From positions 124,001-188,000 of the IMG/VR virus record IMGVR_UViG_3300050014_000823: a stretch of 64,000 bases of DNA; one strand, 5' to 3'. The position numbers were made by a program, and so were the translations under genes. The first letter of the stretch is position 1. Each line of letters opens with the position of its first letter. Positions 48,867 to 63,601 of the stretch are shown here, in pieces. The notes beneath the pieces are model-generated. The model did no database searches. It was given only the letters and a program-made list of their open reading frames with translations, and was not told where the DNA came from.

Positions 48867-48894
48867 AAAAAAAAAGCCAACAAATCGTTGGCTT
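48867..48894 (-). terminator. Rho-independent terminator
   Basis: Stem AAGCCAAC/GTTGGCTT with a T-run. Confidence 0.75.
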
Positions 48895-49293: not shown

Positions 49294-50133
49294 TTATTTA
49301 AGTCCTTGTATTAATGTATCGCCATATTTAATGCCATCATATCCCATATGCTGTGCTTTTTCGGCAATTGCTTTATTTTTTAAGTTAATTGGTGGAACTT
49401 TATATTGTTCACCTAATTTTTCAAAGTTTACGTGCGGAAACCATGCTTTAGCAAGTACTTCTGCAGGTATTTGGCTGTCCTTATACTCGATGCCTAAGTC
49501 ATTGGTATCAAGTAAGTTTTCAAAATCAATCTGATATTTAATAAATCCTTCAACAGGTGTTAATGTAAAGAAATTTCCAATGACGGACCTTTCTTTAATT
49601 GGTTCTCTACGATACGCAATTATCGACTGGTCATTTTTGCTTGGATTTTCTGATTCAACGCCTGCATTATTTTCTTCAAGTGCTGAAAGAAATTCATTGT
49701 AGCTTACACCTGAGTTTGTTTGATTATTTGCATTAAGAACATCCTGTCCGACCACTTCTTCCATTTTCTGCACTTCGGTATAGTCATAAACGTCCTGTAT
49801 TTTATTTAAAAGTCTGCAGGCATCTTTAAATTCTAAGTCGATTTTAATTGCTGTCAACGGTAAGTTATCTGTTGTGGCAAAAACATACCGATGATGCCCG
49901 TCACAGATGGTATTTTCTTTATCAAGCCAAATTGGATTCATATCATTTGGCTTTGCTTTTTCAACATCATCAGAAAAAGTAAATCCTTGTGACACATTTA
50001 AATTTTTTAACTCTTCTGGACTAATTTGAATGTATTCATAATCAACACCCTCCTCATCGAGTTGTTTCACGACAGCATCAACAGGTGCGCTAATCTGTGG
50101 CAAATAGTACGGCTTGTGTTTCATTCTTATCAT
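49294..50133 (-). CDS. ParB/sulfiredoxin-like N-terminal domain protein
   Basis: PIWLDKENTICDGHHRYV motif. Confidence 0.6.
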   Translation of the reverse strand: MIRMKHKPYYLPQISAPVDAVVKQLDEEGVDYEYIQISPEELKNLNVSQGFTFSDDVEKAKPNDMNPIWLDKENTICDGHHRYVFATTDNLPLTAIKIDLEFKDACRLLNKIQDVYDYTEVQKMEEVVGQDVLNANNQTNSGVSYNEFLSALEENNAGVESENPSKNDQSIIAYRREPIKERSVIGNFFTLTPVEGFIKYQIDFENLLDTNDLGIEYKDSQIPAEVLAKAWFPHVNFEKLGEQYKVPPINLKNKAIAEKAQHMGYDGIKYGDTLIQGLK

Positions 50134-50873
50134 ATTACTGACAAATTTTTTAATTCACATTCTAATGCTTCTTTAACAGTGCCTAATACAGAATAAGGTA
50201 TTTTAATTAATTTATAGCCATTGTTAATAGCATAATTAATTTTAATTTTGTCACGTTTTTTTGTATCCAATAAAGCATTGTCACCACCAAAAAAATCAAC
50301 AGATTTATAATGTTGAATTCCATCGAACTCTATGAATATTTTATGTTTGGGTAGATAAAAATCATAATATAAATTCGAAACAGATTTTAAATTATTAAAT
50401 GTTACTTCACGCTCAAAGTTAATGTTGTGTTTCAACAAAATATTTGCTATTTGTTCTTCATTATGTGAAGCACGACATTTTCTACATCCATATCCATGTA
50501 AATGTGCATGGGGCGTTTGTTCAAATTTACCATGCTTATTACAAATAATCGTTATTTTGTTTTCATATCCACCATATTTTACTAACGAATAATCAAATCT
50601 ATTGCCGTGCATTTCTTTTGCTTTTTCAATAAAAGTTTCATTGGTGAACCTATTTTCTTTTGAGATTTTTTCGTATTGACATTTCTTACACCCATATCCC
50701 GTTAAATGGTCATTCGGTGTTTGCAAAAATTCTCCATGTTTAGTACAAATAATAATAACTTTATTTTTGTTGCCAACATACTCAACTTTCGAATAATCAT
50801 ATTTATCACCATGTTTATTTAGTGATTTTAATATGAATTCTCCTGTGTTTGATTTTTTTGTTGACCTAATCAT
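50130..50873 (-). CDS. Free-standing endonuclease (DUF723-like repeats plus Vsr-like domain), copy 2
   Basis: Same repeat and YDFYLPKHKIFIEFDG.QH core as copy 1; late motif at 50887-50895. Confidence 0.75.
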   Translation of the reverse strand: MIRSTKKSNTGEFILKSLNKHGDKYDYSKVEYVGNKNKVIIICTKHGEFLQTPNDHLTGYGCKKCQYEKISKENRFTNETFIEKAKEMHGNRFDYSLVKYGGYENKITIICNKHGKFEQTPHAHLHGYGCRKCRASHNEEQIANILLKHNINFEREVTFNNLKSVSNLYYDFYLPKHKIFIEFDGIQHYKSVDFFGGDNALLDTKKRDKIKINYAINNGYKLIKIPYSVLGTVKEALECELKNLSVI

Positions 50874-50896: not shown

Positions 50897-51475
50897 TCAG
50901 ATTATAATTTTTTTTAGTTCGTCTTGAATAATGCATAATGCATTCTGACTTCGACTTGTTTCTGTCAAAGCAATAGTACCTTCAGTTGCACGATAAATAT
51001 TAAATTCAACACCCGATGGTAGTTTACTTCTGATTTCTTCGTATGCTTCAATATCAACATCACGGTCCTCATAGACGTTTATTACCTTCAAGTCTGGTAG
51101 TTGCTGTACATAACGCATAACCTTAACACCTTTGTTGCCTTCTGCACGTTTCATGTCAAATTTATCGACTTTGATTTTATTTGCATCAAGTACTGCTTCA
51201 ACTTCTGAACGTAGTTTTTCCATTCTCGATGTTAAAACAATAACATAAGTTCCGGGAGTTACAATCTCTTTTTTGAGTTGTTTTAACACACTTGGAAATG
51301 GTTTGATGTCAAAAACCTCTAAGTCCAGGCTTTCTGGTCTACCCCACCATCCACTAAATGGATATTCTTTATCCATTTTCTCCGACCATTCTTTTTTACC
51401 TGTTTCTGGCATAGGAGAATTCATAAGTGTCCCGTCAAAATCAAATACTGCTAATCTCTTAATCATAACAAACAA
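50897..51475 (-). CDS. HAD phosphatase of the RNA-repair type (Swiss-army-knife HAD-like)
   Basis: AVFDFDGTLMNSP.P (motif I), W.GWW..P.SL, VLTSR (motif II), VYEDR (motif IV). Confidence 0.75.
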   Translation of the reverse strand: MFVMIKRLAVFDFDGTLMNSPMPETGKKEWSEKMDKEYPFSGWWGRPESLDLEVFDIKPFPSVLKQLKKEIVTPGTYVIVLTSRMEKLRSEVEAVLDANKIKVDKFDMKRAEGNKGVKVMRYVQQLPDLKVINVYEDRDVDIEAYEEIRSKLPSGVEFNIYRATEGTIALTETSRSQNALCIIQDELKKIII

Positions 51476-51960
51476 TTATATTTTATTTCATTAATATTGC
51501 TTATCTCTGAGCAATACGGTGCAAATATATCTTTTTTTATTAAATAAATGTTCATTTCCTTAGTAATATTTCCTTCTTGTTGAACGCTAAAGGTTTCATA
51601 TCGAGTTTCAGGATGCTCAACAATACAATCGTGAATTCTTTGCTTCTCAATTATGTATGCTGTTTCTCCGTCTGCAATAAGCCAATAATCTGCTTTGGTA
51701 ATCAATAAACCCGACCACCTGCCATTACAGCCAACCTCAATACAAATATTGCCCGTAATATAAGACATTTCATCATACTTACATTCAAGAGTCTTTGAGG
51801 ATTTACTGAAATCTCCGTTGAAAAGAATTATGTCGTAGAAACTATAATCTTCTCTTTTCATGTTTTTGTATGCGAGAGGTAATACCTTACTATTGATATC
51901 TTCTAAGACGAATTTTTCAAAATCAAATCCTTTTGCAGATGCTTCTTTCCAACTTGGCAT
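51463..51960 (-). CDS. PD-(D/E)XK nuclease-like protein
   Basis: YDII...TLECKYD...TGNICIE...SGL..TKADYW pattern. Confidence 0.6.
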   Translation of the reverse strand: MPSWKEASAKGFDFEKFVLEDINSKVLPLAYKNMKREDYSFYDIILFNGDFSKSSKTLECKYDEMSYITGNICIEVGCNGRWSGLLITKADYWLIADGETAYIIEKQRIHDCIVEHPETRYETFSVQQEGNITKEMNIYLIKKDIFAPYCSEISNINEIKYNCLL

Positions 51961-51961
51961 A

Positions 51962-54900
51962 TTATTCTACTTCGGTTACTTTTCCTGTTAATATCAATGG
52001 TTCACTCAAATTTACCCACATGCTTAATTGATTTGACATCATTGGTTTACCACCCTGTGCACGATTTACGGCAATAGTTATATGTGGCTTCTTATTCTTT
52101 GTGAGATATTTATCCACCACCACACCAACTGCCATAACCATATCATCCATAGAAAATTCTGTGGCTTCCATAACAATAGTCATGCCCAAGAATTTCAAAT
52201 ACTCTGGAGCAATCGGACCTAAGTTCATTGTCATGTGATGTGCAATAGTTTCCCAACCTTCGGGAATCATATTACCAAGTCTCTTAAGCAATGCTGTACG
52301 GGATTTGTCATCAAGCACCACGGCAGTATATTTCACATTTTTATTCATGTCTTCGTCAAGTACTTCGTTATCAACTAATTTGTGATATAAATCGTGTTTT
52401 AATTTTTCATCATGGCTGAAATCCTCATAATTATTCTGTAAGAATTCCAATACGGATTTATCTGATGCACTTTCATATCCACCTTGATTCCACTCATAAT
52501 ATTTATCCGTAAAGAAATTAATATCAACCTGTTGTCCATTTACGTTCCAAGTAGGCTTCTCTTGACCTGTTTCAGGATAACTATATTCGTTAAGTGTAAT
52601 TGGTTCGCCTTTAACATTCTCATAATACTCCGGATAAAAATTATATTGAGGATTACGTCTTTTTGCAGCTCTTAAGAAGTCATTAACAATTTTTATGTTG
52701 TCATAATCATATTCATCTGCAGCAAAATCATAACTACTGTCAGCCAAACCGAAATCATTTGTGCTTCCAATTCTGTTTACAAGCATCCATTCAGTCAAAT
52801 AATTATACATGGCTTCTGTATCACCCTCAATAAATCCCAATGCTCTACCAATATTACCATGATTAAAATAACCGTCCTTTTGTGCAAGAAATAAATTGCC
52901 CTCTTGGTCAATTATTCCTCTGACTCCCGGACCGATATTCCGTAATGATTTAGGATTTTCATATATTGGTGACTTTTTACCATTTCTATCTCTTACCATA
53001 GCAACTGGTTCTTCTTCCTGTGCCTGTACTGCACCCCTTGCAATCACGTCTTGTTCTGCACTCTGATTTGGCATGTTAAACATCCTTTCAGCAGCTTTAT
53101 CGGCAATACTTTCATCTACACTACCGTCAAGCATAAGTTTATCGCCATCATTGCCTTTATGACCTTTCCAAGTATAAACCAATTCAGTACCGTTAAGCAT
53201 TCTGTTCTTCTCGAATGGTTTAATGTACTTCTGTCCTTCTCCGGGTTTAACATACGCAATTGTAATATGTGGATGATAATCGGGGAATGCACTTGTATGT
53301 GGTAATGCTTTCATTATCTCATTTAATTTTGTAAGTTCTGGAGATTCAACATCGAACTTAACAACATCAAACTTAGGATTACCAGTGAAAAACGATATGC
53401 CCTTAATTCCTATCTTAATTGGTTCTATCGGCATATTTTTTTCAAACAAACTAAAGCAATCTTCTGAAGTTACTTCATCGTGAAAACCATATAATATTGT
53501 AGTATGTGGTTCTGTTTCAATTCCATATCCTGGCTCGTCATAAACATCATCAGGAGAAATTATTGACGTAATTTTTGTCCAAATCGGAACGTCAAGAAAC
53601 AACATCAGACATCCATATTCTATTTTGTCCGTGGGTTTTACTTCTTCCTTAATCATTTCGCCATTTTGTTTCGCCAAAGCTAATAAATCTTCACGATTAT
53701 TCCTAACCTTATCTGCATAAACCTTTAGCAATAATGATTTTTGCATGTCGCCAATTGCCTTACCCTGTAAACCAAGTTGTGACAAATCATTACCATTAAC
53801 AGCTAATTCGTTGACAGTTTTAGGATATTTGCCCTGTTGAAATTCTTCTGAGGCTTTTTGAAGTCCCATTGGAATTATCTGACTCTGTAATGCCTGTGGA
53901 CTTAGCAGATACATATTATGTGCAATTGACCTATCGAGAACATCATGTGTTATGTCGGGTAATGTAAACGCTAATTCAAGTGCTTTAATTTCCTTATATG
54001 TTGGGATATCACCTTTGAGATTATTCTTGTAAAATTCCGAAGGACTCTGAACAGTACCAACTGCCAACAGATAAATAAATTCACCCATTGTTTTAACATC
54101 GGCAATTCTATCGCTAATCTGCTTTGGCTGTCCACCGAAAATCTGTTCATATAAGCCAGTATTCACAAGTAAATCCGCACCCATTTTCACATTACCCTTC
54201 TTGATTATCTTATCGAATTCCGTTAAAATTCTCTCTGGTGCAATTTCTTTAACCCTCTGGGCATTTTCTTTTATCATCTGCATAGTCTGTGGCTCAATTG
54301 TAAACCCGAAACGTGATGCAAATTGTACTGCACGCAACATTCTCAATGGGTCATCACTGAATGCCTGTGGATTAACAATACGAATAATTTTGTTTTTAAG
54401 GTCTTCTTGACCACCAAATGGGTCAACTATATTACCCTCTGAATCTTTTGCAATAGCATTAATTGTAAAATCCCTGCGTTCCAAGTCTTTTTCAATCGGT
54501 AGTGCATGGTCAGACTTAACATCAAAACCTTGATGACCACCTTCACCCGTAGCTGTTTCAGTACGTGGAATAGCAATGTCAATATCATCGGTAGCACCCT
54601 TTGGCTTGAATTTCAACACACCAAATGATTTACCAACAGCATCTACACGACCATATTTGCCAAGAAGTTGTTCAAGTTCTTCAAACGGCACACCAGTAAT
54701 AAGCACATCCAAATCTTTGGATTGTTTACCAAGAAATTCATCCCGGACCGCACCACCAACACTATAAATTTTACCACCAAGTTGCTCAACCTCTTGTTTG
54801 AAAGGCAAGTCTTGTAATGACATTATTTCCGCTTCGTTCATGACTGATTCTTCAAGTGCATTATCTCCATAAAAACGTATTGATTCCGCTATGAATTCCA

Positions 54901-57900
54901 TAGTCGGATTTTTTTCTTTTGCCAAAGATAAGAATTTTTCGTAATATGGCAACGCTTCTTCTCTTTTTGGTACAGTTTCCCAATAACTTGAATGAAAGTT
55001 TCTTTTTTCTTCTGGATATAACGGTGCATTTGACTCTCCAACTAAGATGATATTATCTCTTTTATATCGTTGAACAGTCAAAAAATTAGTTGGTGGGGTT
55101 TTATCCCAATGTTCCTCATTTTCAATGACTCCCAAGCTATTGAGGGTATAGAGTAATTCGAAGTGTATAACAACACTTTTTTGTTCAGTGTATAAGTTTC
55201 CTTCTTTGTCAACAACACCCCGGACATCACCCCAAATATTTTTCCAAGATTTCGGATTTTTTATTATTACCAACCCATTTTCGGGATTATTGTAAACGAT
55301 ATCTTCGGAATCCTGCTCCCTGTTGAACCTATCGTTGAATTCTGCATCAGGATTCGGAACATTAAACATTTTTTCCGCAGCAACATCCGCTACACCTTCG
55401 TCAACACTTACTGGTTCTCCTTCAATAAAAGTATAATATTCTTCATAAAACTCATATTGTGGATTTCGTCTTTTTGTGGCTTTCAATATATCAATTGCAT
55501 TGTCATAGTTATGCGCATTTGAATTAATATATCTTGAAGAAATGTCCCCCAAACCGAAATTATTTGTTAAGTCAACCCTATTAAGTAATTGATATTTATC
55601 TAATTCTGAATATATTCTTGCATCAATCGTGAATAATCCCAATGCTTTTGCTATATTACCGTGGGTAAATGAATAATCTGCTTGTGCAACATATAGATTT
55701 CCATCTGTATCTGCGATTGCCCGTACATCCCTTTGAAATCTTTCTAAGGATTTGGGATTTTTATAAATTTGACTAACTCTTCCAATGGTATCTACTACTT
55801 CTCCAACAGGTTCATTCGTATTTTTTTCTATCTCACCCTGTGCTTGAACGTCTTGTTCTGCATGTGGGTCGGGAATATTAAATGCTTTCTCAGCATATTT
55901 ATCAGCCACACCTTCCATTTGATATTTCTTACCACCCGTAGGTTTGAAATTCTTCTTAAATGCAGTGTACATCAGACTTGAAATTCTTTCAGATTCTCCT
56001 TCTTCACTGATACTCTCTGTTCTTTTTCTGAAAAGCAATTCAACTTTATTTGCAATGTCATGGGCGTTATCGTATGTATAACCATAATGCTTGATAAGAT
56101 AGCTTTCAACCCTTTCATGAAGTAAAATCCCTTCAAAGTCGTTTGGCTTTGTCAAATGTACGTCATCAACCCAAAGTTCGTCTGCTGGAATGTGCTTAGC
56201 ATATTTTTGCTGTGATTTTGGTAAGTCATAGTCAACCCAATGATTGCCACCTTCAACCCACTCAATAAAACCACTGTCACGCACTTCGTCACCATTAACT
56301 GCATAAACGGGATTGACATCAATACCGTCATTGTATGTACGGATTAATTTCTTATCCAATTCATGTGTAGTATTGTCTTTCTCAATCTGTGGTTCACTTA
56401 CAGGAAATTCTTCTTCGTGTATTGTGTTTTTCATTTTATCGAGATACTGCTCATAGTCTGTATCTTGAAATATTTCAGAAGTTTCTTCGTCTGGCTCATC
56501 GTATGCTTCTAAACCATTAATCTCATAGAAAGCATTCATTCTCTTTTTAAAATCATCAGTAATATCGACTTTGCCAATATAATGACCTTGTACTGCCCTT
56601 CTGAATCTAACTTCTTTTAAATAAGTAAAATCACCTATTTCCCAATGAGAAATGTCCGCATCGGGTTTTTCGTTTATTTCATAAACATAAAAAACTCCCG
56701 GATTTTTACCGTGTTGCATAAACATCGAATACAGTCCCATTAAAGCACCACCAACACTTTTACTTGCAGCAATTTCTGGTGTTTCACTAACCCAAAACGT
56801 ATCATACTTATATATTGGATTACCGTCATCGTCAATTGCTTCGTAATAACCTTCGGGTTCAAATTCAATCGTTTCACCCATATATTTTTCAACAGCACGA
56901 TAATATTTTTCACCACCACTTGTTACCACTTCATTTATTGCAGTATTGGGAAGTCTGTACATCAACTGCATAGTCTGGAAGTCCTTATTCCTGCCTTTGT
57001 TCATGATAAATCCCAATGATTTATACCATGCAGTTAGTTTAGACTTACTTGCGCCCCACATACTATCGGGAGTTAATGTAACAATTAATTTATTTCTGTC
57101 GGCATAGTCAAAGATAAGTTTCATTGCATCATTGGCATATCCTTTACCTCTGAATTCTTTGTTGATAAAAATTTTATCTATTGCGATGTAATGATTCTGA
57201 CCTTGAACGCCTCTGTCCATGATACCTACCTCACCAACGACTTGACCATCATCAGTTATCTTAAGCGAATCATATCCGCTTAAATTGTTTGGTAGATTAA
57301 GATTCACAGACTCTTTAATACTACCAAATGTCAAGTTGCCAATATCTCCTTGATTACAGGCAGTGCTTGTACCGTCACCATTACCACCAAGTCTGCACTT
57401 TTTCTTAACATCAACAGTTTTACTGCCAGATTGAAACGACTGAACTCTTTCTGTTATTTGAAATTCGTCTTGGGTTGCATCACCGACAACATGGTTATAT
57501 TCTAAGTCTTCGTTTACTTCACTGTTTGCGTTTAAATCGTTGCTTATTGAGGGTGAAGTGTCCATATTATTGTATGTTGGAAAATTATCTTGACCAAAAC
57601 TATTGTCTGTCGAATATAATGCTGAACCGTCTTCGTCAACTTGAACAGGTTCTGGCATATTATTAGATTTAAAAAAATAATTACCAAAACCTACATCAAA
57701 AAATCCCAAATTACCATTTGGTTTATATCCTAAGTTATTTGGATTTGTATAATCTGTACTTTCTAAGCCGTATTTTTTTACTTCTTCGCCAATTTTAAGT
57801 ATTTTATCAAAAAATTCTCTGTCTTGTGGATTTCTTGCAAAGTATTTTTGAACCTTATCTTCATCCACATTGTCATCGCCAAAACGATTGTGTATGAAAT

Positions 57901-60028
57901 GGTCAAGAACATCGCCATAGTTTGCACCCATTATTTTTTCAAACGCAAATTTCATTCTTTCAACTCTTGCAATAAAATCAGCCTTATCTGTTCTTAACTT
58001 CTCTAAGATTATCACATAAAGGTCATATCTCGTTTCGCCCGACAATGTATTAGACTTAATTGAGTAGACCTTATATGGTTGAGCAATGTATTCTAATGGT
58101 TTACCAATAAGTTCAAGATTTTCATTTGCTTCGCTTTGGTCCTTAGTAACCTTTAATACTAAATTGTTTCCTATATCATATGCATAGCCAAATACACCAT
58201 CACCAAGAGGTTTTGGCTGACCATATCCAAACTTCTGTGCTACACTATTCGCCACTTTATTAGCGACTTCTCTCGGAAATCCTGTAGGTTCTTCATTCAG
58301 TACTTCTTCACCTTCGGGTAAAGAAATTCGGTTTTCTGGTGGTAAATCCGGTACAACTACACCCATGCATCCACCTATGTCATAGTATGTTAAAATACCG
58401 TTCTTATATCCCAAATTACTGAGAGTCATATAATCGTCTGACTTAATCATCAGTGCAAGTAATTCTCTTTTAATGTCATAGAGTCCCAACATAAAACGAT
58501 ATGCCTTTTCTCTATCGCCTGCAGCAATATTAGCATCGGGATTTGCCGTTAAAATTAGTTTAGCTAATTCTGGAAAATCGTTAAATGTTTTTCCAAAAAA
58601 TTCCGTATCTTCTTTCTTAGGTTTACCTTTGATTAAAATTCTCAATAACCTACCGTATAAGTCTTCACCGAGCGAATTAATTATTTCAGTGTATCTTTCA
58701 AATTCCTGATGTGGTTTATCAACAATATTGTCTTCGATAAGCGCATAAACTGCTTTGTTTTGTTCGGTGTCAGTTACCTTATACACATTGTAAACCATTG
58801 CAAGTGTTTTAGGCTTACCCCTGCTAATTTTTAAACCAGCATCGACCTCACATGCATCAGTAGTAATTTTTAAAACCCTGTTGTTATTAACCTCATAAGC
58901 ATATCCATATCCACCACCACCAAGATATTTAATAGCACCAAGATTTAACTTCTGTGCAACCGCATTAGCAAGAGTATCAGAATATTCTCTTGGTAATTGC
59001 ATTGCTGCAACTTTTGGACTACTCTCATTTATTTCTACAGTTTCTTCCTCAAGTGGTTCTCTATCATAGAATTTACCTCTGATAAGATAGTCTTGAAGTT
59101 CCAATAAGTTACTATAAAATTTCTTTTTCTCAGGTACGTGTTCAAGTACTTCTTTAAGGTTGTTTACTACATCATGAAATTCATCGACAATATATGGAGC
59201 ACTTGGAAGTTTTGATGTTGGATATTTGTCTCTGTTGAGTACAAATGAAATAAAATCTTCATTAATTACGCCAGGTCCGTCACCTACACCGTAAGGCATA
59301 AGTCCCCACATAGCTTGTCGGGTATCAACGGCATCTTGTGGTGGTAAATCACCAAGCATATCGTCATTACCATCGGCAAAGTTATAAAGTTCATACATTT
59401 GATACTTTTGGTTTTTGCCACTATAATGAGTATCTACAACTTCATCATTTAACCCATAGTCGGTTAAAACTATTGCAGGTTTACCGTTACGCAGTACTTC
59501 TCCAAAGGTACTTGGTCTACCCATATCGCCTGAGTTTTGAGCATAGCTTGCAACAAAATCGGCTAATGAAAATGCAAATTCGTTTTTATTCCAAAAAAAT
59601 TCTTCAAGTTCGGGTGATTGTGGAAATATTTTCTTATGCCCCTTACTTAATTCTTCGGCATTCTTAAGAAACTCTTTTAAATCATTCAAACTTGGAATAC
59701 CTGTTACTTGTTTAATACGTGCTTCATTGACTTTCTTAGCCTTTTCTGCTATCAACCAAGTATCGTCATCCATAGAATCAATAACCTTTGCAAGTATATG
59801 ATGATTGCTTTCAAAATATCCTGCACCTGTCTCTGCTTCGTTTTGACCAACACCTTTGGGGTTTTTCGCAAGTTTTAATACCTTTTCACCATCAATGTCA
59901 TAAACGATTCGACCACTACCACTACCAATTCTCGGTAAGTATTGATTTGCGTACTTTATTTTTCCATTAAATGATTTAATTTTAAGGAATTCTGGTAAGA
60001 AATTCGTTTTGAATTCAGCGTATGTCAT
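51962..60028 (-). CDS. 2688-aa multi-enzyme polyprotein: 3 kinase-like domains, GNAT, ART-like, HExxE domain, 3 copies of an unknown domain, CCA-adding enzyme, 2 2H phosphoesterases
   Basis: Kinase GxGxxG/VLK/DxG x3; GNAT FRGKGYA; CCA motifs GGAVRD..DLD, RRDFTINA, DPLRMLR; 2H motif pairs HTT/HIT and HMT/HIT; late motif at 60049-60057. Confidence 0.85.
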   Translation of the reverse strand: MTYAEFKTNFLPEFLKIKSFNGKIKYANQYLPRIGSGSGRIVYDIDGEKVLKLAKNPKGVGQNEAETGAGYFESNHHILAKVIDSMDDDTWLIAEKAKKVNEARIKQVTGIPSLNDLKEFLKNAEELSKGHKKIFPQSPELEEFFWNKNEFAFSLADFVASYAQNSGDMGRPSTFGEVLRNGKPAIVLTDYGLNDEVVDTHYSGKNQKYQMYELYNFADGNDDMLGDLPPQDAVDTRQAMWGLMPYGVGDGPGVINEDFISFVLNRDKYPTSKLPSAPYIVDEFHDVVNNLKEVLEHVPEKKKFYSNLLELQDYLIRGKFYDREPLEEETVEINESSPKVAAMQLPREYSDTLANAVAQKLNLGAIKYLGGGGYGYAYEVNNNRVLKITTDACEVDAGLKISRGKPKTLAMVYNVYKVTDTEQNKAVYALIEDNIVDKPHQEFERYTEIINSLGEDLYGRLLRILIKGKPKKEDTEFFGKTFNDFPELAKLILTANPDANIAAGDREKAYRFMLGLYDIKRELLALMIKSDDYMTLSNLGYKNGILTYYDIGGCMGVVVPDLPPENRISLPEGEEVLNEEPTGFPREVANKVANSVAQKFGYGQPKPLGDGVFGYAYDIGNNLVLKVTKDQSEANENLELIGKPLEYIAQPYKVYSIKSNTLSGETRYDLYVIILEKLRTDKADFIARVERMKFAFEKIMGANYGDVLDHFIHNRFGDDNVDEDKVQKYFARNPQDREFFDKILKIGEEVKKYGLESTDYTNPNNLGYKPNGNLGFFDVGFGNYFFKSNNMPEPVQVDEDGSALYSTDNSFGQDNFPTYNNMDTSPSISNDLNANSEVNEDLEYNHVVGDATQDEFQITERVQSFQSGSKTVDVKKKCRLGGNGDGTSTACNQGDIGNLTFGSIKESVNLNLPNNLSGYDSLKITDDGQVVGEVGIMDRGVQGQNHYIAIDKIFINKEFRGKGYANDAMKLIFDYADRNKLIVTLTPDSMWGASKSKLTAWYKSLGFIMNKGRNKDFQTMQLMYRLPNTAINEVVTSGGEKYYRAVEKYMGETIEFEPEGYYEAIDDDGNPIYKYDTFWVSETPEIAASKSVGGALMGLYSMFMQHGKNPGVFYVYEINEKPDADISHWEIGDFTYLKEVRFRRAVQGHYIGKVDITDDFKKRMNAFYEINGLEAYDEPDEETSEIFQDTDYEQYLDKMKNTIHEEEFPVSEPQIEKDNTTHELDKKLIRTYNDGIDVNPVYAVNGDEVRDSGFIEWVEGGNHWVDYDLPKSQQKYAKHIPADELWVDDVHLTKPNDFEGILLHERVESYLIKHYGYTYDNAHDIANKVELLFRKRTESISEEGESERISSLMYTAFKKNFKPTGGKKYQMEGVADKYAEKAFNIPDPHAEQDVQAQGEIEKNTNEPVGEVVDTIGRVSQIYKNPKSLERFQRDVRAIADTDGNLYVAQADYSFTHGNIAKALGLFTIDARIYSELDKYQLLNRVDLTNNFGLGDISSRYINSNAHNYDNAIDILKATKRRNPQYEFYEEYYTFIEGEPVSVDEGVADVAAEKMFNVPNPDAEFNDRFNREQDSEDIVYNNPENGLVIIKNPKSWKNIWGDVRGVVDKEGNLYTEQKSVVIHFELLYTLNSLGVIENEEHWDKTPPTNFLTVQRYKRDNIILVGESNAPLYPEEKRNFHSSYWETVPKREEALPYYEKFLSLAKEKNPTMEFIAESIRFYGDNALEESVMNEAEIMSLQDLPFKQEVEQLGGKIYSVGGAVRDEFLGKQSKDLDVLITGVPFEELEQLLGKYGRVDAVGKSFGVLKFKPKGATDDIDIAIPRTETATGEGGHQGFDVKSDHALPIEKDLERRDFTINAIAKDSEGNIVDPFGGQEDLKNKIIRIVNPQAFSDDPLRMLRAVQFASRFGFTIEPQTMQMIKENAQRVKEIAPERILTEFDKIIKKGNVKMGADLLVNTGLYEQIFGGQPKQISDRIADVKTMGEFIYLLAVGTVQSPSEFYKNNLKGDIPTYKEIKALELAFTLPDITHDVLDRSIAHNMYLLSPQALQSQIIPMGLQKASEEFQQGKYPKTVNELAVNGNDLSQLGLQGKAIGDMQKSLLLKVYADKVRNNREDLLALAKQNGEMIKEEVKPTDKIEYGCLMLFLDVPIWTKITSIISPDDVYDEPGYGIETEPHTTILYGFHDEVTSEDCFSLFEKNMPIEPIKIGIKGISFFTGNPKFDVVKFDVESPELTKLNEIMKALPHTSAFPDYHPHITIAYVKPGEGQKYIKPFEKNRMLNGTELVYTWKGHKGNDGDKLMLDGSVDESIADKAAERMFNMPNQSAEQDVIARGAVQAQEEEPVAMVRDRNGKKSPIYENPKSLRNIGPGVRGIIDQEGNLFLAQKDGYFNHGNIGRALGFIEGDTEAMYNYLTEWMLVNRIGSTNDFGLADSSYDFAADEYDYDNIKIVNDFLRAAKRRNPQYNFYPEYYENVKGEPITLNEYSYPETGQEKPTWNVNGQQVDINFFTDKYYEWNQGGYESASDKSVLEFLQNNYEDFSHDEKLKHDLYHKLVDNEVLDEDMNKNVKYTAVVLDDKSRTALLKRLGNMIPEGWETIAHHMTMNLGPIAPEYLKFLGMTIVMEATEFSMDDMVMAVGVVVDKYLTKNKKPHITIAVNRAQGGKPMMSNQLSMWVNLSEPLILTGKVTEVE

Positions 60029-60069: not shown

Positions 60070-60097
60070 AAAAAGAAAGGACATCTTACTGTCCTTT
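60070..60097 (-). terminator. Rho-independent terminator
   Basis: Stem AAAGGACA/TGTCCTTT overlapping the 60086 stop. Confidence 0.65.
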
Positions 60098-60898
60098 ATT
60101 TTTGTTTTTGTTTTGTAATTCTCGTATGGTTTCGTAAACCACCGATTTTATCATTTCCTTATTCTCTGTAAGCACTTCTTTGATTCTTTCAACAGCATAC
60201 ATTTCAAGTATGGTTGACTTAATGGCTTCCTCCACAATCGGACCGAAGTTTTCCATGAGATAGTTATTCACTGTTCTCTTTACACTCTCAGTTAAATAAC
60301 CCTCATTAATCATTGGCATACCATTGTTTCCGAATGACACTGCAGGTGGATTTAATAGACTTCCATCAGGATTAACGGGTTGTCCCTTGGCATTGTATAG
60401 CTGATTTGCAGCCATTGCTCTATTGTTATTAAAACCTTCGATAGATTCAGCAAGAGTTCCATTATTACCTGCCACACCAACACTTCTGAATTTTCTTTGA
60501 AAATCACTGAAGATTGCATCGTCTCTTTCTGGTCCCATTCCCATATCGGCTTCATTAATTCTTCCCGGCTGAACATACTGTGGGGGTTGATTGTGTTGCG
60601 GTGCTGCAGGAGCAACATAATTTGTAGAATTTTTTAATTCCTTAATTTTATTTATCGCTTCAGGTGTTACGACACCACTTTTAACTGCGCCACTAATAAT
60701 GTCTGCCCTTTCATTCATTGTCTTTATATTGTTCACAACAGGAGTATTCTGACCTGTATGAAGTGATGTAAGCAAGCTATTTAGGAATACATCTTTTGCA
60801 GGTATTGTAGTACCTTGCATTGTTTCACCAAGAATGCCTTTTTCCTTTTTGCGGGTATCTATCTCAGTTCTGAGTTTATTTAAATCGGGTTTTGCCAT
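60086..60898 (-). CDS. Hypothetical late protein
   Basis: Late motif at 60933-60941; RINE and MINE motifs; helical C-terminus. Confidence 0.6.
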   Translation of the reverse strand: MAKPDLNKLRTEIDTRKKEKGILGETMQGTTIPAKDVFLNSLLTSLHTGQNTPVVNNIKTMNERADIISGAVKSGVVTPEAINKIKELKNSTNYVAPAAPQHNQPPQYVQPGRINEADMGMGPERDDAIFSDFQRKFRSVGVAGNNGTLAESIEGFNNNRAMAANQLYNAKGQPVNPDGSLLNPPAVSFGNNGMPMINEGYLTESVKRTVNNYLMENFGPIVEEAIKSTILEMYAVERIKEVLTENKEMIKSVVYETIRELQNKNKNKGQ

Positions 60899-60945: not shown

Positions 60946-61836
60946 TTATTTGAAAAAAGTCGGTTTATTTAGATTTTCTTGTGCAATATTTGTTCTATTT
61001 AATTCATTCACTGCATCACTTTCGGCATTTTTAAAAAATCCGACATCGGTTTGCTTCTGACTTGGCTGAACTAATTTCACGTATAAGTCTTTAAGATTTC
61101 CAACAACTGAATTAGGGTCAATGCTTTGTAACTGATTCTCTGTTTTCAATACCATATCGCCATTCTCTGTACTAACCACCCAATATTTTGCTCTTGAACC
61201 ACCTGCTCTCATCTGATTTACCATACCCCACAGATGTTTAACTTCATCGGCAGTAATATCTCTTTGTTTTTTAGCAACATTTGAGAAATTTCTGAACTTA
61301 TTCTTTTGTCCTGCAAATGCAGATGGTTGTGGTTCGGGAAGTTTTTGTGCAGTAGTATTACCCACAACATTTGTTTGTGGTTCACCGCTATCTATTTGTA
61401 CTGCAGCCACAATGCCCGTCATTTGGGAATCATTGGGGTTATATCCTTCGGGAAATTTATCTTTGTTTGTACTGAAAATTTCACCTGTCGGTAAAAAGGA
61501 TGTAATTTTATCTACTCTGAATAATCTCCATCCGGGTTTAGCCTTTCCCTTTTGATTATAATATACTTTCCTACTGTCGGTGTTACCTGCTTCCTGCCAT
61601 GCACGAAGTAACATATATCCACCTTCCGCTTGTGCTTTCTGTGATTTACTATGACCCAATACCATTGGCATTATTGTTCGATAACCTTTCATAATGGTGT
61701 CATCACCAGCATAATATATGTGAACATACTTATGCTTATTAATAGCATCGGCAATAGTACCCTCTCCAACACCTTCATTTAAAAGTTGCCTGAAGTGAGT
61801 CAGGGTTTCCAAGAATATTTTAGCCTCACTTAACAT
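60946..61836 (-). CDS. WYL-like domain protein
   Basis: VHIYY.G......R.I.P..LG......LLRAWQ......GWRLFRVDKI pattern. Confidence 0.65.
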   Translation of the reverse strand: MLSEAKIFLETLTHFRQLLNEGVGEGTIADAINKHKYVHIYYAGDDTIMKGYRTIMPMVLGHSKSQKAQAEGGYMLLRAWQEAGNTDSRKVYYNQKGKAKPGWRLFRVDKITSFLPTGEIFSTNKDKFPEGYNPNDSQMTGIVAAVQIDSGEPQTNVVGNTTAQKLPEPQPSAFAGQKNKFRNFSNVAKKQRDITADEVKHLWGMVNQMRAGGSRAKYWVVSTENGDMVLKTENQLQSIDPNSVVGNLKDLYVKLVQPSQKQTDVGFFKNAESDAVNELNRTNIAQENLNKPTFFK

Positions 61837-62118: not shown

Positions 62119-62904
62119 TTAATCGTACTTTTTAAACGATAATGTTATGTATTCAATCAAATTTGGTACAATGTCCAGGTAATGCATTTCATCCACATCA
62201 TACCAACCATAGTTTGTGTTTTCGGCATTATCTAACTCAATTTCAGTTGGGTCGCCCTCATATCGACAAGCAAAAACTGTTTCAATGCTCTCAGGATTCC
62301 TTTGTATTGTGAAGGTCCTGACAAACTTATTAATTTCCAACCCAATTTCTTCAAGTATCTCTCTCTCAATAGCACGCTGTGGAGTTTCACCCTTCTCAAT
62401 AGCACCACCAACCAATGCCCATTTCTCCGGCATCCAAGGTGCTTCTTTGCCTCTTTTCAACAGTAAAATCTTATTGTCGTTATTTACAATAACTGCAACG
62501 GCATTTTTTTGTTTTTCTTCTTTCTTCTCTTTCTTTTCTTCATTCAGTGTTGGCATGGGACTATTCGGCATTAATTCTGAATTAGGATTTGATGTCATAT
62601 CCTGCTTGGTTTCTTTTGACCTTGCCACACCTGCTCTATCTTGTGCTAATGAAGTTTCAATAAACTGTCTCATTGCTTCCCCACCAGCAAGGGCATATTG
62701 TGTTTTATCATCAGTCTGTGGATTAAAATAATCAAAGAAGTTTTTAAGTCTTTTCATTGCTTGATATGTTAAATTACCGTTCTTAAGAATGAAATTAGCA
62801 CGTTTAAGACCATTTTCATTCGAAGTGGATGCTTTAGCCACCGCAATACCATTAAGTACATTTGAGGGTATCCTATATGTCTTATCTTTGAGATATTGGT
62901 TCAT
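62119..62904 (-). CDS. NUDIX hydrolase fused to an N-terminal helical domain
   Basis: Nudix box GGAIEKGETPQRAIEREILEEIGL; TLNEE linker. Confidence 0.85.
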   Translation of the reverse strand: MNQYLKDKTYRIPSNVLNGIAVAKASTSNENGLKRANFILKNGNLTYQAMKRLKNFFDYFNPQTDDKTQYALAGGEAMRQFIETSLAQDRAGVARSKETKQDMTSNPNSELMPNSPMPTLNEEKKEKKEEKQKNAVAVIVNNDNKILLLKRGKEAPWMPEKWALVGGAIEKGETPQRAIEREILEEIGLEINKFVRTFTIQRNPESIETVFACRYEGDPTEIELDNAENTNYGWYDVDEMHYLDIVPNLIEYITLSFKKYD

Positions 62905-63601
62905 ATGCTTCTAAGATTTTGTTTATTCTGTTGATTTGGTCAAACTTTATTCTCAATAGAAAGTAGTTGTTTGATTCTGCAAAAGTATTTTTTATTTCAT
63001 CGTTAATTTTCTGGATTCTAAACTTATCAAGTCCACCGAAATGGTTATTAGCTATAAAGTGTTGTGCACCATCAAACTCTATTAATACGTTGTTCTCTGG
63101 AAGAAAAAAATCGAATGCAAGTTTATTTATATTTTTACAGTCATTAAATTTTTTCTCTCTTTCAAAAGCAATTGAATTATTTATTAAATATTTTGCAATC
63201 TCTCTTTCTCCGATAGATTCTGTACAACTGGGACAACCACATCCTTTTAAATGAGTATTTGGTTTTTGATTAAATTTTCCATGAATCGGACATAATATTT
63301 CTACATAAATATGTGCTGTTATATAGTTAACATTAGAATAATCATATCTATCTCCGTGAATTTCTTTTGCTTTAGTAATAAAATAATCAGTATTTTTTCT
63401 TAATTTCATTTTACCACACAATGGACAACCACAACCCTCTAAATGAGTATTTACTCGCTGTATGAATTCGCCATGTGTGGGACATGATATGATAATATTA
63501 TCGTGTGTATGTTTAAAATCAACCAAATCATACTCATAATAATTATTGTGCACAGCATTTGCTTTAGCAATAAACGCATCTATAGTTAATATCCTTGCCA
63601 T
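62882..63601 (-). CDS. Free-standing endonuclease (DUF723-like repeats plus Vsr-like domain), copy 3
   Basis: Same repeats and FDFFLPENNVLIEFDGAQH core; overlaps both neighbours. Confidence 0.75.
   Translation of the reverse strand: MARILTIDAFIAKANAVHNNYYEYDLVDFKHTHDNIIISCPTHGEFIQRVNTHLEGCGCPLCGKMKLRKNTDYFITKAKEIHGDRYDYSNVNYITAHIYVEILCPIHGKFNQKPNTHLKGCGCPSCTESIGEREIAKYLINNSIAFEREKKFNDCKNINKLAFDFFLPENNVLIEFDGAQHFIANNHFGGLDKFRIQKINDEIKNTFAESNNYFLLRIKFDQINRINKILEAYEPISQR

What the first reader, a model, noticed from the sequence alone, without database searches (positions are those of the whole stretch)
50897..54830. tRNA/RNA 3'-end healing set: 2H phosphodiesterase, HAD phosphatase and CCA-adding enzyme
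SEEN: a class II CCA/poly(A) nucleotidyltransferase (GGAVRD, DLD, RRDFTINA, DPLRMLR; about 53650-54830). A C-terminal 2H domain (AHHMT...PHIT; about 51962-52330) resembles tRNA-ligase-type cyclic phosphodiesterases. An RNA-repair-type HAD (DFDGT) lies two genes downstream. KNOWN: 2H enzymes open 2',3'-cyclic phosphates, HAD phosphatases remove 3'-phosphates (as in T4 Pnkp), and CCA enzymes rebuild tRNA ends. INFERENCE: together they form a route to restore tRNAs clipped near the acceptor end by host abortive-infection nucleases. No RNA ligase is seen in this window, which favours 3'-end re-tailing over anticodon re-ligation.
Basis: partly seen in the sequence, partly recalled or inferred. Interest (0 to 1): 0.8.

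Follow-up and report, generated by a model that had tools for sequence, protein, structure and literature searches.

The report
Giant phage protein with tRNA-end repair module
The CCA-adding enzyme and the 2H phosphodiesterase are real, but they are domains of one 2,688-residue multi-enzyme protein of an uncultivated jumbo phage, and comparison with relatives shows that CCA enzyme, 2H phosphodiesterase and the neighbouring HAD phosphatase recur together as a unit that most likely mends clipped tRNA 3' ends.

Summary
A full-length class II CCA-adding module (aa 1735-2140), a compact C-terminal 2H domain (aa 2562-2688) and an HAD gene two genes downstream are all present. That ORF also holds three protein-kinase-like modules, a GNAT, a second LigT/Acb1-like 2H domain, three copies of an unknown ~180-aa repeat and two unknown domains.

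More than 130 metagenomic homologues (1,500-3,200 aa, contigs up to 357 kb) share a core of kinase modules, CCA and 2H. Of 113 members with CCA, 96 have a 2H domain, and none has 2H without CCA. The C-terminal 2H is CNPase/tRNA-ligase-CPD-like (Z 13.4). The HAD is Swiss-Army-Knife type. It lies downstream in four related loci and is fused as CCA-2H-HAD or 2H-CCA-HAD in others.

These fusions support a tRNA 3'-end heal-and-retail unit. No biochemistry was done. The "no ligase" argument fails at genome scale, because two Rnl2-type ligases lie elsewhere. The architecture resembles polyvalent phage proteins and appears undescribed in the literature I could read.

The parts
51962..60028 (-). Giant ORF of 2,688 aa, a multi-enzyme polyvalent-type protein.
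   Evidence: ORF listing. More than 130 homologues of 1,500-3,200 aa. Domain maps.
59039..60028 (-). Kinase-like module K1 (aa 1-330). It has a G-rich loop GSGSGR, a VLK lysine and a D-Y-G motif.
   Evidence: Alignments A1 and A3. PDB profile hit to the SteC effector kinase, E 0.004. phrog_4301. Present in 114 of 120 family members.
58304..59011 (-). Kinase-like module K2 (aa 340-575). It keeps invariant K387, E394, D532, N538 and D550-x-G552.
   Evidence: Invariant columns in A3. Model pLDDT about 90. Foldseek matches to APH(2''), p38 and MTR kinase at probability about 1.0.
57629..58276 (-). Kinase-like module K3 (aa 585-800).
   Evidence: Same evidence as K2. Present in 82 of 120 members.
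57329..57451 (-). Conserved two-cysteine linear motif (aa about 860-900; K-C-R-L-G-G ... A-C-N-Q-G-D). Function unknown; lies in a poorly modelled stretch (pLDDT about 35-55).
   Evidence: Invariant K875, C878, G882, T887 and S888, and nearly invariant C891 and N892-D895, in A3. Present in 118 of 120 members. Blocks 860-899: 36, 53, 45, 56.
56999..57295 (-). GNAT acetyltransferase domain (aa 912-1010).
   Evidence: Pfam Acetyltransf_1 at 24.4 bits, above the 20.7 cut-off. Present in 36 of 120 members.
56429..56926 (-). Unknown domain X1 (aa 1035-1200).
   Evidence: Conserved in 25 of 120 members. No Pfam or PDB hit. Not ART-PolyVal by hhalign, probability 0.3%.
55925..56416 (-). Unknown domain X2 (aa 1205-1368) with an invariant H-E-x-x-E ... 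A-H ... N ... E ... R pattern. A metal site or zincin-like peptidase is speculation only.
   Evidence: Alignment A8. No PDB or Pfam hit. Present in 31 of 120 members.
54839..55921 (-). Two tandem copies of a repeat of about 180 aa (REP1 aa 1370-1545, REP2 aa 1546-1730). Fold has no match.
   Evidence: Alignment A2. Family HMM.
53609..54826 (-). Class II CCA-adding-type nucleotidyltransferase (aa 1735-2140) with head, neck, body and tail regions.
   Evidence: All catalytic motifs are at least 95% conserved in 110 members. Motif D reads D-D-P-L-R in 109 of 110.
53123..53596 (-). 2H phosphoesterase #1 (aa 2145-2302), LigT/Usb1/Acb1-like. Motifs H2175-T-T and H2254-I-T.
   Evidence: Pfam 2_5_RNA_ligase2 32.5 bits and Acb1 27.2 bits. 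Z about 12 to Usb1, LigT, drCPDase and Acb1. Motifs invariant in 38 sequences. Present in 47 of 120 members.
52559..53116 (-). Third copy of the repeat (REP3, aa 2305-2490).
   Evidence: Model pLDDT about 90 but no PDB match with Z of 4 or more.
52346..52558 (-). Small helical subdomain (aa 2491-2561) that precedes the C-terminal 2H domain.
   Evidence: Only weak structural matches, Z 4-5.6.
51965..52345 (-). Compact C-terminal 2H cyclic phosphodiesterase (aa 2562-2688), CNPase/tRNA-ligase-CPD-like. Motifs H2598-M-T and H2649-I-T.
   Evidence: Pfam PF08302 at 23.2 bits against a cut-off of 23. CNPase Z 13.4. Invariant motifs. 1,933 related cluster representatives, with CCA, AAA_33 kinase or HAD as partners. 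Present in 88 of 120 members.
51463..51960 (-). 165-aa ORF between the giant gene and the HAD gene, with invariant D43 ... E59-C-K61. It may be a PD-(D/E)xK-type nuclease. Function unknown.
   Evidence: phrog_13596, function unknown. Orthologues in L007 and L008. Its ATG lies one base after the giant gene's TAA.
50897..51466 (-). HAD phosphatase of the Swiss-Army-Knife RNA-repair family (189 aa from the ATG). Motifs DFDGT, LTSR and E-D-R-D-x-D.
   Evidence: ATGA overlap with the upstream stop. Syntenic orthologues and fusions.
50130..50873 (-). HNH/homing endonuclease, probably a selfish insertion within the same transcription unit.
   Evidence: phrog_559, E 6e-59. A paralogue lies at 62882-63601.
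60076..60097 (-). Terminator-like hairpin just upstream of the giant gene.
   Evidence: sequence.
48874..48894 (-). Terminator-like hairpin (9-bp stem followed by T7) that would close a six-gene unit: giant, 165 aa, HAD, HNH, 279 aa, 122 aa.

Best explanation
The region is the 3' third of a 2,688-aa multi-enzyme protein of an uncultivated 299-kb jumbo phage, plus two small downstream genes.

The protein has the build of the phage 'polyvalent' proteins. From the N-terminus it carries three C-lobe-poor kinase-like modules, a conserved two-cysteine motif, a GNAT, two unknown domains and repeat modules. These are followed by an RNA module: CCA-adding enzyme, LigT/Acb1-like 2H, repeat, and a compact CNPase/Trl1-CPD-like 2H. 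A Swiss-Army-Knife-type HAD phosphatase gene is translationally coupled two genes downstream.

Proposed mechanism, with each step marked:

1. A metal-independent RNase removes or damages the tRNA 3' tail and leaves a 2',3'-cyclic phosphate. Candidate sources are HEPN-type toxins and Cas13 collateral activity. (Inferred.)
2. The compact 2H domain opens the cyclic phosphate to a monoester, a 2'-phosphate by analogy with CNPase and the Trl1 CPD. (Fold and motifs shown; chemistry inferred.)
3. The HAD phosphatase removes the monoester. (Family and motifs shown; substrate inferred.)
4. The CCA module rebuilds the CCA tail. (Family, full length and conserved motifs shown; specificity inferred.)

The route needs no ligase. 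The kinase and GNAT parts probably modify host proteins. Whether the protein is packaged and injected, or cleaved into pieces, is unknown.
For: Domain identities.

Coupling of CCA and 2H:
- 96 of 113 family members with CCA have a 2H domain.
- 13 of the 17 exceptions end 0-5 residues past the CCA match (12 within 0-1), so they look truncated.
- None has 2H without CCA.
- In the shortest members the compact 2H follows CCA directly.

The compact 2H outside the family:
- A profile of the domain finds 1,933 cluster representatives.
- Multi-domain members mostly pair it with CCA, in both orders.
- In the 24 scanned by Pfam (19 with partners my HMMs did not identify, plus four 2H-CCA proteins and one GNAT fusion), matches include AAA_33 kinase (4), HAD_SAK_1 (3), HAD_PNKP (1) and PolyA_pol (4).
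- The Atlas fold search gives the same partner families.

Coupling of the HAD:
- An orthologue lies downstream of the giant gene in L007, L008, L009 and L012.
- It is fused as K1-...-CCA-2H-HAD in P0120 and P0130, as 2H-CCA-HAD in P0164 and P0205, as 2H-REP-CCA-HAD in P0145 and as 2H-HAD in P0151.

Gene organisation: stop and start codons overlap or abut.

Purifying selection: all CCA motifs, both 2H motif pairs and the HAD motifs are conserved.

Known threats: Cas12a3 cuts CCA tails (PMC12851939). Cas13, a metal-independent RNase, clips tRNA 3' tails (bioRxiv 10.64898/2026.08.25.746378). toxSAS enzymes pyrophosphorylate the CCA end (PMC11245113).

Known chemistry: the Trl1 CPD gives 3'-OH/2'-PO4 ends (PMC6379707 abstract). 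DxDxT phosphatases heal RNA 3' ends (PMC3592404 abstract).

Polyvalent character: homologues carry the Pfam ART-PolyVal domain. PMC5512222 describes kinase, GNAT and 2H domains in phage polyvalent proteins. One relative has an ArdC-N gene next to the giant gene.
Against: - Nothing here is biochemical. Substrate, end chemistry and nucleotide specificity are all inferred.
- Motif D reads D-D-x-x-R rather than the canonical E-D-x-x-R. The effect on CTP/ATP selection is unknown.
- The HAD_SAK_1 score of this protein is below Pfam's cut-off (22.2 against 25.6), and tRNA_lig_CPD is only at the cut-off.
- The authors of PMC5512222 argued that 2H domains of polyvalent proteins are not repair enzymes, because they never associate with ligases.
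- The genome does encode Rnl2-type ligases and a P-loop kinase, so the healing enzymes could also serve ligation.
- No peptidase domain, portal/MuF fusion or proteomic evidence shows that the protein is packaged or processed.
- The host almost certainly has its own CCA enzyme.
Confidence: 0.6

Rival explanations
1. The 2H domains are anti-signalling phosphodiesterases in the manner of Acb1 or viral 2'-5' phosphodiesterases. They would destroy cyclic or 2'-5'-linked nucleotide messengers of host immunity. They sit beside the CCA enzyme only because polyvalent proteins collect unrelated counter-defence activities.
For: - 2H #1 passes the Acb1 Pfam cut-off (27.2 bits here; 36.6 bits, nearly full length, in homologue P0042).
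- The top Foldseek hits are a poxvirus cGAMP phosphodiesterase and phage Acb1-type enzymes.
- PMC5512222 proposed this role for 2H domains of polyvalent proteins.
Against: - 2H never occurs without CCA in the family.
- The compact C-terminal 2H is fused to CCA in both orders, and to P-loop kinases and HAD phosphatases, which are end-healing partners rather than signalling partners.
- Its best structural match is CNPase, not Acb1.
- This rival remains open for 2H #1, which is present in only 47 of 120 members.
Confidence: 0.2
2. The 2H and HAD enzymes heal broken ends for the phage's Rnl2-type RNA ligases, as in anticodon-loop repair of the T4 type. The CCA enzyme is an independent housekeeping activity that matures phage tRNA or tops up CCA turnover.
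For: - The genome has two PF09414 RNA ligases and an AAA_33 kinase.
- The only phage tRNA (anticodon CUA) lacks an encoded CCA.
- PMC7824862 places 2H and Swiss-Army-Knife HAD enzymes in ligase-based repair in jumbo phages.
Against: - The ligases lie 75-100 kb away and are not linked to the module. No ligase domain appeared among the partners found: my HMM set had no ligase model, and Pfam was run on only 24 of the 62 multi-domain proteins.
- CCA itself is the commonest partner of the compact 2H domain, and 2H-CCA-HAD proteins exist without a neighbouring ligase.
Confidence: 0.15
3. The nucleotidyltransferase is an offensive or regulatory RNA-tailing enzyme that adds poly(A), CCACCA or another tail. 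It would mark host RNAs for decay as part of host takeover, alongside the kinase and GNAT modules.
For: - Class II CCA enzymes and poly(A) polymerases are close relatives; PcnB models score 117 bits.
- Motif D is non-canonical.
- The rest of the protein looks like host-modifying enzymes.
Against: - CCA models score higher than PcnB (166 against 117 bits), and the match covers the whole tRNA-binding body and tail.
- The strict association with end-healing 2H and HAD domains is hard to explain for a tailing enzyme.
Confidence: 0.07

Closest known systems
Phage polyvalent proteins (Iyer, Burroughs, Anand, de Souza, Aravind 2017; PMC5512222)
   Same: - One very large polypeptide joins unrelated enzymatic domains.
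- It includes kinase domains of reduced size, a GNAT and 2H phosphoesterases.
- Family members carry the Pfam ART-PolyVal domain.
- The gene lies next to virion (baseplate) genes.
- One relative has an ArdC-N gene beside it.
   Different: - A class II CCA-adding enzyme is not among the domains that paper describes; its Pol-beta nucleotidyltransferases belong to firmicute conjugative elements.
- No zincin peptidase, MuF or portal domain was detected here.
- The kinase modules do not hit the Pfam Kinase-PolyVal model.
- Packaging or injection has not been shown.
Jumbo-phage RNA repair toolkit (Iyer et al. 2021, PMC7824862; T4 Pnkp/Rnl pathway)
   Same: It uses the same component families: 2H phosphoesterase, stand-alone Swiss-Army-Knife HAD phosphatase, CCA-adding enzyme and Rnl2-type ligases elsewhere in the genome.
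   Different: - CCA and 2H are fused here, and in relatives HAD is fused too, forming a ligase-independent unit.
- The unit is embedded in a giant kinase-bearing protein.
- The accessible text of that paper describes no such fusion.
E. coli multifunctional CCA addition/repair enzyme (class II CCA enzyme with an HD domain)
   Same: It is one polypeptide combining CCA addition with 2',3'-cyclic phosphodiesterase and phosphatase activities that clean tRNA 3' ends. (The HD activities are from my own knowledge; the family name is from NCBIfam PRK10885.)
   Different: - The phage uses 2H and HAD domains instead of an HD domain, which is a non-homologous replacement.
- The head and neck match PRK10885 only over positions 2-202.
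Fungal/plant tRNA ligase Trl1 healing domains and vertebrate CNPase
   Same: The C-terminal domain has the 2H fold with two H-x-T motifs. It matches the CNPase catalytic domain best (Z 13.4) and reaches the cut-off of Pfam tRNA_lig_CPD.
   Different: - It is about 125 aa instead of about 210-250, with only 51 residues between the two motifs.
- It is not joined to a ligase or a P-loop kinase here.
Acb1 anti-CBASS phosphodiesterase
   Same: 2H #1 passes the Pfam Acb1 cut-off and superposes on Acb1 structures (Z 11.5-11.9).
   Different: It scores higher with the general 2'-5' RNA ligase/LigT model, and it is always fused downstream or upstream of a CCA enzyme in this family.

Membership tests
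Class II CCA-adding enzyme / poly(A) polymerase superfamily (PF01743 + PF12627) | Motif A (GGxVRD and the DxD carboxylates) and motif B (RRD). | tested here: met
   GGAVRD, KDLD and RRDFTINA are present and at least 95% conserved in 110 homologues. Pfam scores are 83 and 60.7 bits, above the cut-offs.
Class II CCA-adding enzyme / poly(A) polymerase superfamily (PF01743 + PF12627) | Motif D nucleotide template E-D-x-x-R. | tested here: inconclusive
   It reads D-D-P-L-R in 109 of 110 family members. The D and R positions are kept and the E is replaced by D. The consequence is unknown.
Class II CCA-adding enzyme / poly(A) polymerase superfamily (PF01743 + PF12627) | Full head-neck-body-tail length, and a better match to CCA than to PcnB. 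| tested here: met
   PRK13299 positions 11-393 of 396 at 166 bits, against PcnB TIGR01942 at 117 bits. Both are below their equivalog cut-offs, so it is not an orthologue of either.
Class II CCA-adding enzyme / poly(A) polymerase superfamily (PF01743 + PF12627) | Adds exactly C-C-A to tRNA. | not testable with these tools
   This needs an enzyme assay.
2H phosphoesterase superfamily | Two H-x-T/S motifs on a pseudo-symmetric alpha/beta fold. | tested here: met
   Both domains qualify: H2175-T-T with H2254-I-T, and H2598-M-T with H2649-I-T. The motifs are invariant in the family. Fold matches reach Z 12-13.
tRNA-ligase CPD / CNPase branch of 2H (PF08302) | Sequence match above the Pfam cut-off, and closest fold. 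| tested here: inconclusive
   23.2 bits against a cut-off of 23 for this protein. Among related compact 2H proteins, 10 of 24 hit PF08302. The best structural match is CNPase, Z 13.4. The domain is about half the usual size.
Acb1 anti-CBASS (PF23474) | Sequence match above the Pfam cut-off, and better than other 2H families. | tested here: inconclusive
   2H #1 scores 27.2 bits against a cut-off of 27, but 2_5_RNA_ligase2 scores 32.5 bits. Structural Z values are equal within 1 unit for Usb1, LigT and Acb1.
HAD_SAK_1 (Swiss-Army-Knife RNA repair HAD, PF10307) | DxDxT nucleophile motif plus motifs II-IV. | tested here: met
   DFDGT, LTSR, conserved lysines and E-D-R-D-x-D are invariant in four orthologues.
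HAD_SAK_1 (Swiss-Army-Knife RNA repair HAD, PF10307) | Pfam score above the cut-off. | tested here: inconclusive
   22.2 bits against a cut-off of 25.6 for this protein. It is the only family hit for all four orthologues, best E 3.5e-7.
Polyvalent proteins (PMC5512222) | Many domains with disparate biochemical activities in one polypeptide of a phage or conjugative element. | tested here: met
   Kinase-like x3, GNAT, CCA nucleotidyltransferase and 2H x2. ART-PolyVal occurs in homologues.
Polyvalent proteins (PMC5512222) | Zincin-like metallopeptidase for processing (present in about 36% of such proteins). | tested here: not met
   No peptidase family was found. X2 has H-E-x-x-E rather than H-E-x-x-H and has no matches.
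Polyvalent proteins (PMC5512222) | Packaged in the virion and delivered with the DNA. | not testable with these tools
   The only evidence is context: baseplate genes begin 5-8 genes downstream.
Protein-kinase-like fold | G-rich loop, VAIK-type lysine, alpha-C glutamate, catalytic D...N and DFG-type aspartate. | tested here: met
   K2 carries G372-G375, K387, E394, D532, N538 and D550-x-G552, invariant or nearly so. K3 is similar, but its catalytic aspartate is less than 90% conserved. K1 lacks the asparagine. Fold matches to APH(2'') and MAP kinases.
T4-type tRNA repair (Pnkp + Rnl1/Rnl2) | RNA ligase linked to the healing enzymes. | tested here: not met
   There is no ligase in the window or among the fusion partners found (no ligase model in my HMMs; Pfam on 24 of 62). 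Ligases occur 75-100 kb away. RtcB is absent. The Rnl1 search had no working control.

The most novel reading that the evidence does not exclude
The giant protein is a virion-delivered polyvalent effector that counters immunity aimed at tRNA 3' tails. Such immunity includes Cas13 and other HEPN RNases, Cas12a3, toxSAS pyrophosphorylation and MenT-type extension. Under this reading the CCA-2H-HAD unit restores chargeable tRNA within minutes of infection. One of the 2H domains also removes cyclic-phosphate-bearing fragments or nucleotide messengers. The three kinase modules phosphorylate host translation or defence proteins. This would be a first dedicated, ligase-independent 'tRNA tail repair' counter-defence, and it would be widespread in uncultivated jumbo phages.
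Probability: 0.15. Interest if true: 0.85.

Novelty: new variant of a known kind. Interest (0 to 1): 0.62.

Why it matters
Defences that disable tRNA by cutting or blocking the universal CCA tail have only just been recognised: Cas12a3, Cas13 tail clipping and toxSAS. No phage answer to them is established. This protein family offers a concrete and abundant candidate. It is a fused cyclic-phosphodiesterase, phosphatase and CCA-adding unit that could rebuild tails without a ligase. The idea can be tested with three recombinant domains and defined tRNA substrates.

The finding also extends the polyvalent-protein concept to a large clade of uncultivated jumbo phages. It adds a CCA enzyme, a compact 125-aa 2H domain family (about 1,900 cluster representatives), an unassigned 180-aa repeat and two unknown conserved domains to the list of parts worth characterising.

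Tried and rejected
- **Stop-codon recoding.** The genome's only tRNA is an amber suppressor, so I checked for recoding. Code 11 gives dense coding and TAG is just a rare stop, so the ORF boundaries stand.
- **Self-BLAST of the giant protein.** It returned only the identity hit. The repeats were found by motif search and alignment instead.
- **X1 as a divergent ART-PolyVal domain.** This was a lead from the protein atlas at scores of 0.7-0.8. Profile-profile comparison rejected it at probability 0.3%.
- **X2 as a zincin peptidase.** There is no HExxH motif and no PDB or Pfam match. It remains unassigned.
- **Repeat module.** No Pfam hit, no PDB fold with Z of 4 or more, and only weak atlas leads.
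- **Complex prediction.** A job with the CCA module, the C-terminal 2H, the phage tRNA and HAD was counted but not folded because it contained RNA. It gives no evidence either way.
- **Bacteroidota-type promoter motif TAnnTTTG as a host hint.** 117 matches against 98 +/- 9 expected, and not placed upstream of genes, so it is not informative.
- **Sigma-70 promoter scan.** Matches were no more frequent than chance.
- **Rnl1 (PF09511) search.** No hit, but the control genomes did not respond either, so this is not evidence of absence.
- **Deposited phages.** Megablast of the region found nothing. By tblastn, only the CCA part and a K1-like segment of about 200 aa in Xanthomonas phages XacN1 and Xoo-sp13 have relatives.
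- **The 2016 Burroughs and Aravind RNA-repair survey.** It defined the Swiss-Army-Knife HAD family but could not be read. Prior description of CCA-2H-HAD fusions there cannot be excluded.

Full report
**What is there**

The window is bases 124001-188000 of a 299-kb viral record that is estimated 91% complete. It has 35% GC and nearly all its genes lie on the minus strand. Standard code 11 gives dense coding and TAG is only a rare stop, so the ORF boundaries are sound.

Pfam finds the CCA/poly(A) polymerase head (aa 1754-1883) and the RNA-binding domain (aa 1908-1964). The module aligns over its whole length with the Bacillus-type CCA enzyme model (positions 11-393 of 396). It scores higher against CCA models than against PcnB. 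Its best solved relative is 1MIV. All catalytic motifs are at least 95% conserved in 110 homologues. The exception in form is motif D, which reads D-D-P-L-R rather than E-D-x-x-R.

H-H-M-T and H-x-T are invariant in 31 sequences. It reaches the cut-off of Pfam's tRNA-ligase CPD family. A confident model (mean pLDDT 89) superposes on the CNPase catalytic domain at Z 13.4 over 125 of its 127 residues.

The HAD ORF has all four HAD motifs. With its three syntenic orthologues it hits only the Swiss-Army-Knife RNA-repair HAD family.

A second 2H domain (aa 2145-2302) follows the CCA module directly. It sits between the LigT and Acb1 families by sequence and by structure.

The N-terminal 900 residues are three tandem protein-kinase-like modules. 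The evidence is a G-rich loop, a lysine, a glutamate, D...N and D-x-G motifs, Foldseek matches to APH(2'') and MAP kinases, and a weak profile hit to the minimal effector kinase SteC.

Between the kinase modules and the CCA module lie:
- a strongly conserved two-cysteine motif;
- a GNAT domain;
- two conserved domains of unknown fold, X1 and X2;
- two copies of a repeat of about 180 aa, with a third copy between the two 2H domains. The repeat has no structural match.

**The family**

More than 130 proteins of 1,500-3,200 aa from metagenomes share this build, on contigs of up to 357 kb. With HMMs made from my alignments, counts among the 120 best members are as follows.

| Module | Members (of 120) |
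|---|---|
| K1 | 114 |
| Two-cysteine motif | 118 |
| CCA | 113 |
| Compact C-terminal 2H | 88 |
| LigT-like 2H | 47 |
| Repeat | 49 |
| GNAT | 36 |
| X2 | 31 |
| X1 | 25 |

Ninety-six of the 113 members with CCA have a 2H domain. In 13 of the other 17 the protein ends 0-5 residues past the CCA match (12 of them within 0-1), so they look truncated. None has 2H without CCA. In the shortest complete members the compact 2H follows CCA directly. Several homologues carry Pfam's ART-PolyVal domain.

No deposited phage has this architecture. The phage's DNA polymerase B is only about 22% identical to the nearest deposited one.

**Are 2H, HAD and CCA a functional unit?**

A profile of the compact 2H domain, searched against 1.84 billion cluster representatives, finds 1,933 relatives. 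Among the best 141, 79 are stand-alone proteins shorter than 190 aa. Most of the multi-domain ones pair the domain with a CCA module, in both orders.

In the 24 scanned by Pfam (19 with partners my HMMs did not identify, plus four 2H-CCA proteins and one GNAT fusion), the families matched are tRNA_lig_CPD (10), PolyA_pol (4), AAA_33 kinase (4), HAD_SAK_1 (3), HAD_PNKP (1) and Zeta-type kinase (2). The Atlas fold search gives the same partner families independently.

The HAD gene lies downstream of the giant gene in four related loci. The same HAD is fused in six proteins.

| Proteins | Architecture |
|---|---|
| P0120, P0130 | K1-...-CCA-2H-HAD |
| P0164, P0205 (about 700 aa) | 2H-CCA-HAD |
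| P0145 | 2H-repeat-CCA-HAD |
| P0151 | 2H-HAD |

P0164 lies on a phage-like contig near a cREC gene and an AAA_33 kinase gene.

In the window, the giant gene's TAA is followed by one base and then the ATG of the 165-aa gene. That gene's TGA overlaps the HAD ATG. Terminator-like hairpins bracket a six-gene unit.

These repeated, differently ordered fusions are the strongest evidence available without experiments that the three activities act on one substrate.

**Mechanism**

Shown: the domain families, the conserved catalytic residues, the folds and the associations.

Inferred: the substrate is the tRNA 3' end, the 2H opens a 2',3'-cyclic phosphate, the HAD removes the resulting monoester, and the CCA module rebuilds the tail.

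Precedents:
- The Trl1 CPD gives 3'-OH/2'-PO4 ends (PMC6379707).
- DxDxT phosphatases heal RNA 3' ends (PMC3592404).
- From my own knowledge, the E. coli CCA enzyme carries an HD domain with cyclic phosphodiesterase and phosphatase activity. The phage solution would be a non-homologous analogue of that.

Threats of the right kind are now known:
- Cas12a3 cuts CCA tails (PMC12851939).
- toxSAS enzymes pyrophosphorylate the CCA end (PMC11245113).
- MenT toxins extend acceptor ends (PMC11541572).

**Limits and rivals**

Two PF09414 RNA ligases (one with the PHA02142 OB domain), an ATP-dependent DNA ligase and a small AAA_33 kinase lie at genome positions 73-101 kb. RtcB is absent. The healing enzymes could therefore also serve ligation. 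However, no ligase domain turned up among the partners found: my HMM set held no ligase model, and Pfam was run on 24 of the 62 multi-domain proteins.

The polyvalent-protein paper argued that 2H domains in such proteins degrade signalling nucleotides or act as RNases. This stays a live option for 2H #1. It is unlikely for the compact C-terminal 2H.

Whether the giant protein is packaged, injected or cleaved is unknown. The only pointers are baseplate genes a few genes downstream and an ArdC-N gene beside the giant gene in one relative.

**Novelty**

The components and the idea of phage RNA repair are established (PMC7824862; PMC5512222). In the text I could read, I did not find three things:
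- a CCA enzyme inside a polyvalent-type protein;
- the kinase x3-CCA-2H core;
- the CCA-2H-HAD fusions as a ligase-independent unit.

The 2016 survey that defined the Swiss-Army-Knife HAD family was not available. I therefore rate this a new variant of a known kind, of moderate to high interest because it is timely and directly testable.

Noticed in passing
Genome G000:C1:1380-1453 (locus L010:180-253), outside the window: The whole 299-kb genome has a single tRNA. Its anticodon is CUA (an amber suppressor, which ARAGORN labels 'Pyl'). Its gene does not encode the CCA tail: the discriminator A is followed by C-A-A-A. There is no sign of general TAG recoding.
   Followed up: partly
window 57329-57451 (aa about 860-900 of the giant protein): A two-cysteine linear motif (K-C-R-L-G-G ... 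T-S-x-A-C-N-Q-G-D) is the most conserved feature of the family, present in 118 of 120 members. It lies in a poorly modelled stretch (pLDDT about 35-55). It may be a metal or disulphide loop, or a targeting or processing signal.
   Followed up: partly
window 54839-55921 and 52559-53116; also genome plus-strand ORFs starting at 27999 (450 aa) and 13380 (318 aa): A domain of about 180 aa with no Pfam, PDB or confident Atlas match occurs three times in the giant protein, up to five times in relatives, and in two other ORFs of this genome. Each copy starts with a conserved A-D-x-x-A-E-x-x-F-N-x-P helix.
   Followed up: partly
window 55925-56416 (X2) and 56429-56926 (X1): These are two conserved domains of unknown function. 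X2 has an invariant H-E-x-x-E ... A-H ... N ... E ... R pattern that suggests a metal site.
   Followed up: partly
window 51463-51960: A 165-aa ORF is translationally coupled between the giant gene and the HAD gene. It has invariant D43 ... E59-C-K61, which resembles a PD-(D/E)xK nuclease motif. It is conserved in two of the five relatives' loci examined (L007, L008); the HMM found no copy in L009, L012 or L013, and L009 has a LAGLIDADG gene at that position.
   Followed up: partly
window 50130-50873 and 62882-63601: Two paralogous HNH/homing endonuclease genes (phrog_559, E about 1e-60) flank the region. One is inserted directly after the HAD gene.
   Followed up: no
window 20428-21720 (plus strand): This is one of the few large genes on the plus strand. 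It is a 430-aa transposase (phrog_506, E 3e-114) lying in the AT-richest 2-kb bin of the window (GC 0.29), so it is probably an inserted mobile element.
   Followed up: no
window 62119-62904 and the three ORFs between it and the giant gene (60086-60898, 60946-61836, and one of about 79 aa): A NUDIX hydrolase and three small genes of unknown function keep the same order upstream of the giant gene in all five related loci examined. DNA polymerase B and an SNF2 helicase lie further upstream.
   Followed up: partly
Genome 71.6-101.9 kb (loci L002-L005), outside the window: This early-type region holds two PF09414 RNA ligases, an ATP-dependent DNA ligase, an R2K ATP-grasp protein, a NADAR domain protein, a 129-aa AAA_33 kinase and NUMOD3 homing endonucleases.
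   Followed up: partly
Locus L008:13110-14708: In one relative, a 532-aa protein with a weak ArdC-N hit is inserted right after the giant gene. ArdC-N is a hallmark domain of polyvalent proteins.
   Followed up: no
window 15692-19015 and 24225-25688: A 1,107-aa SbcC-like protein with an N-terminal metallophosphoesterase region (aa 2-130; phrog_35725, phrog_1649) and a separate SbcD/Mre11-like exonuclease are present. Together they form a DNA-end processing pair.
   Followed up: no
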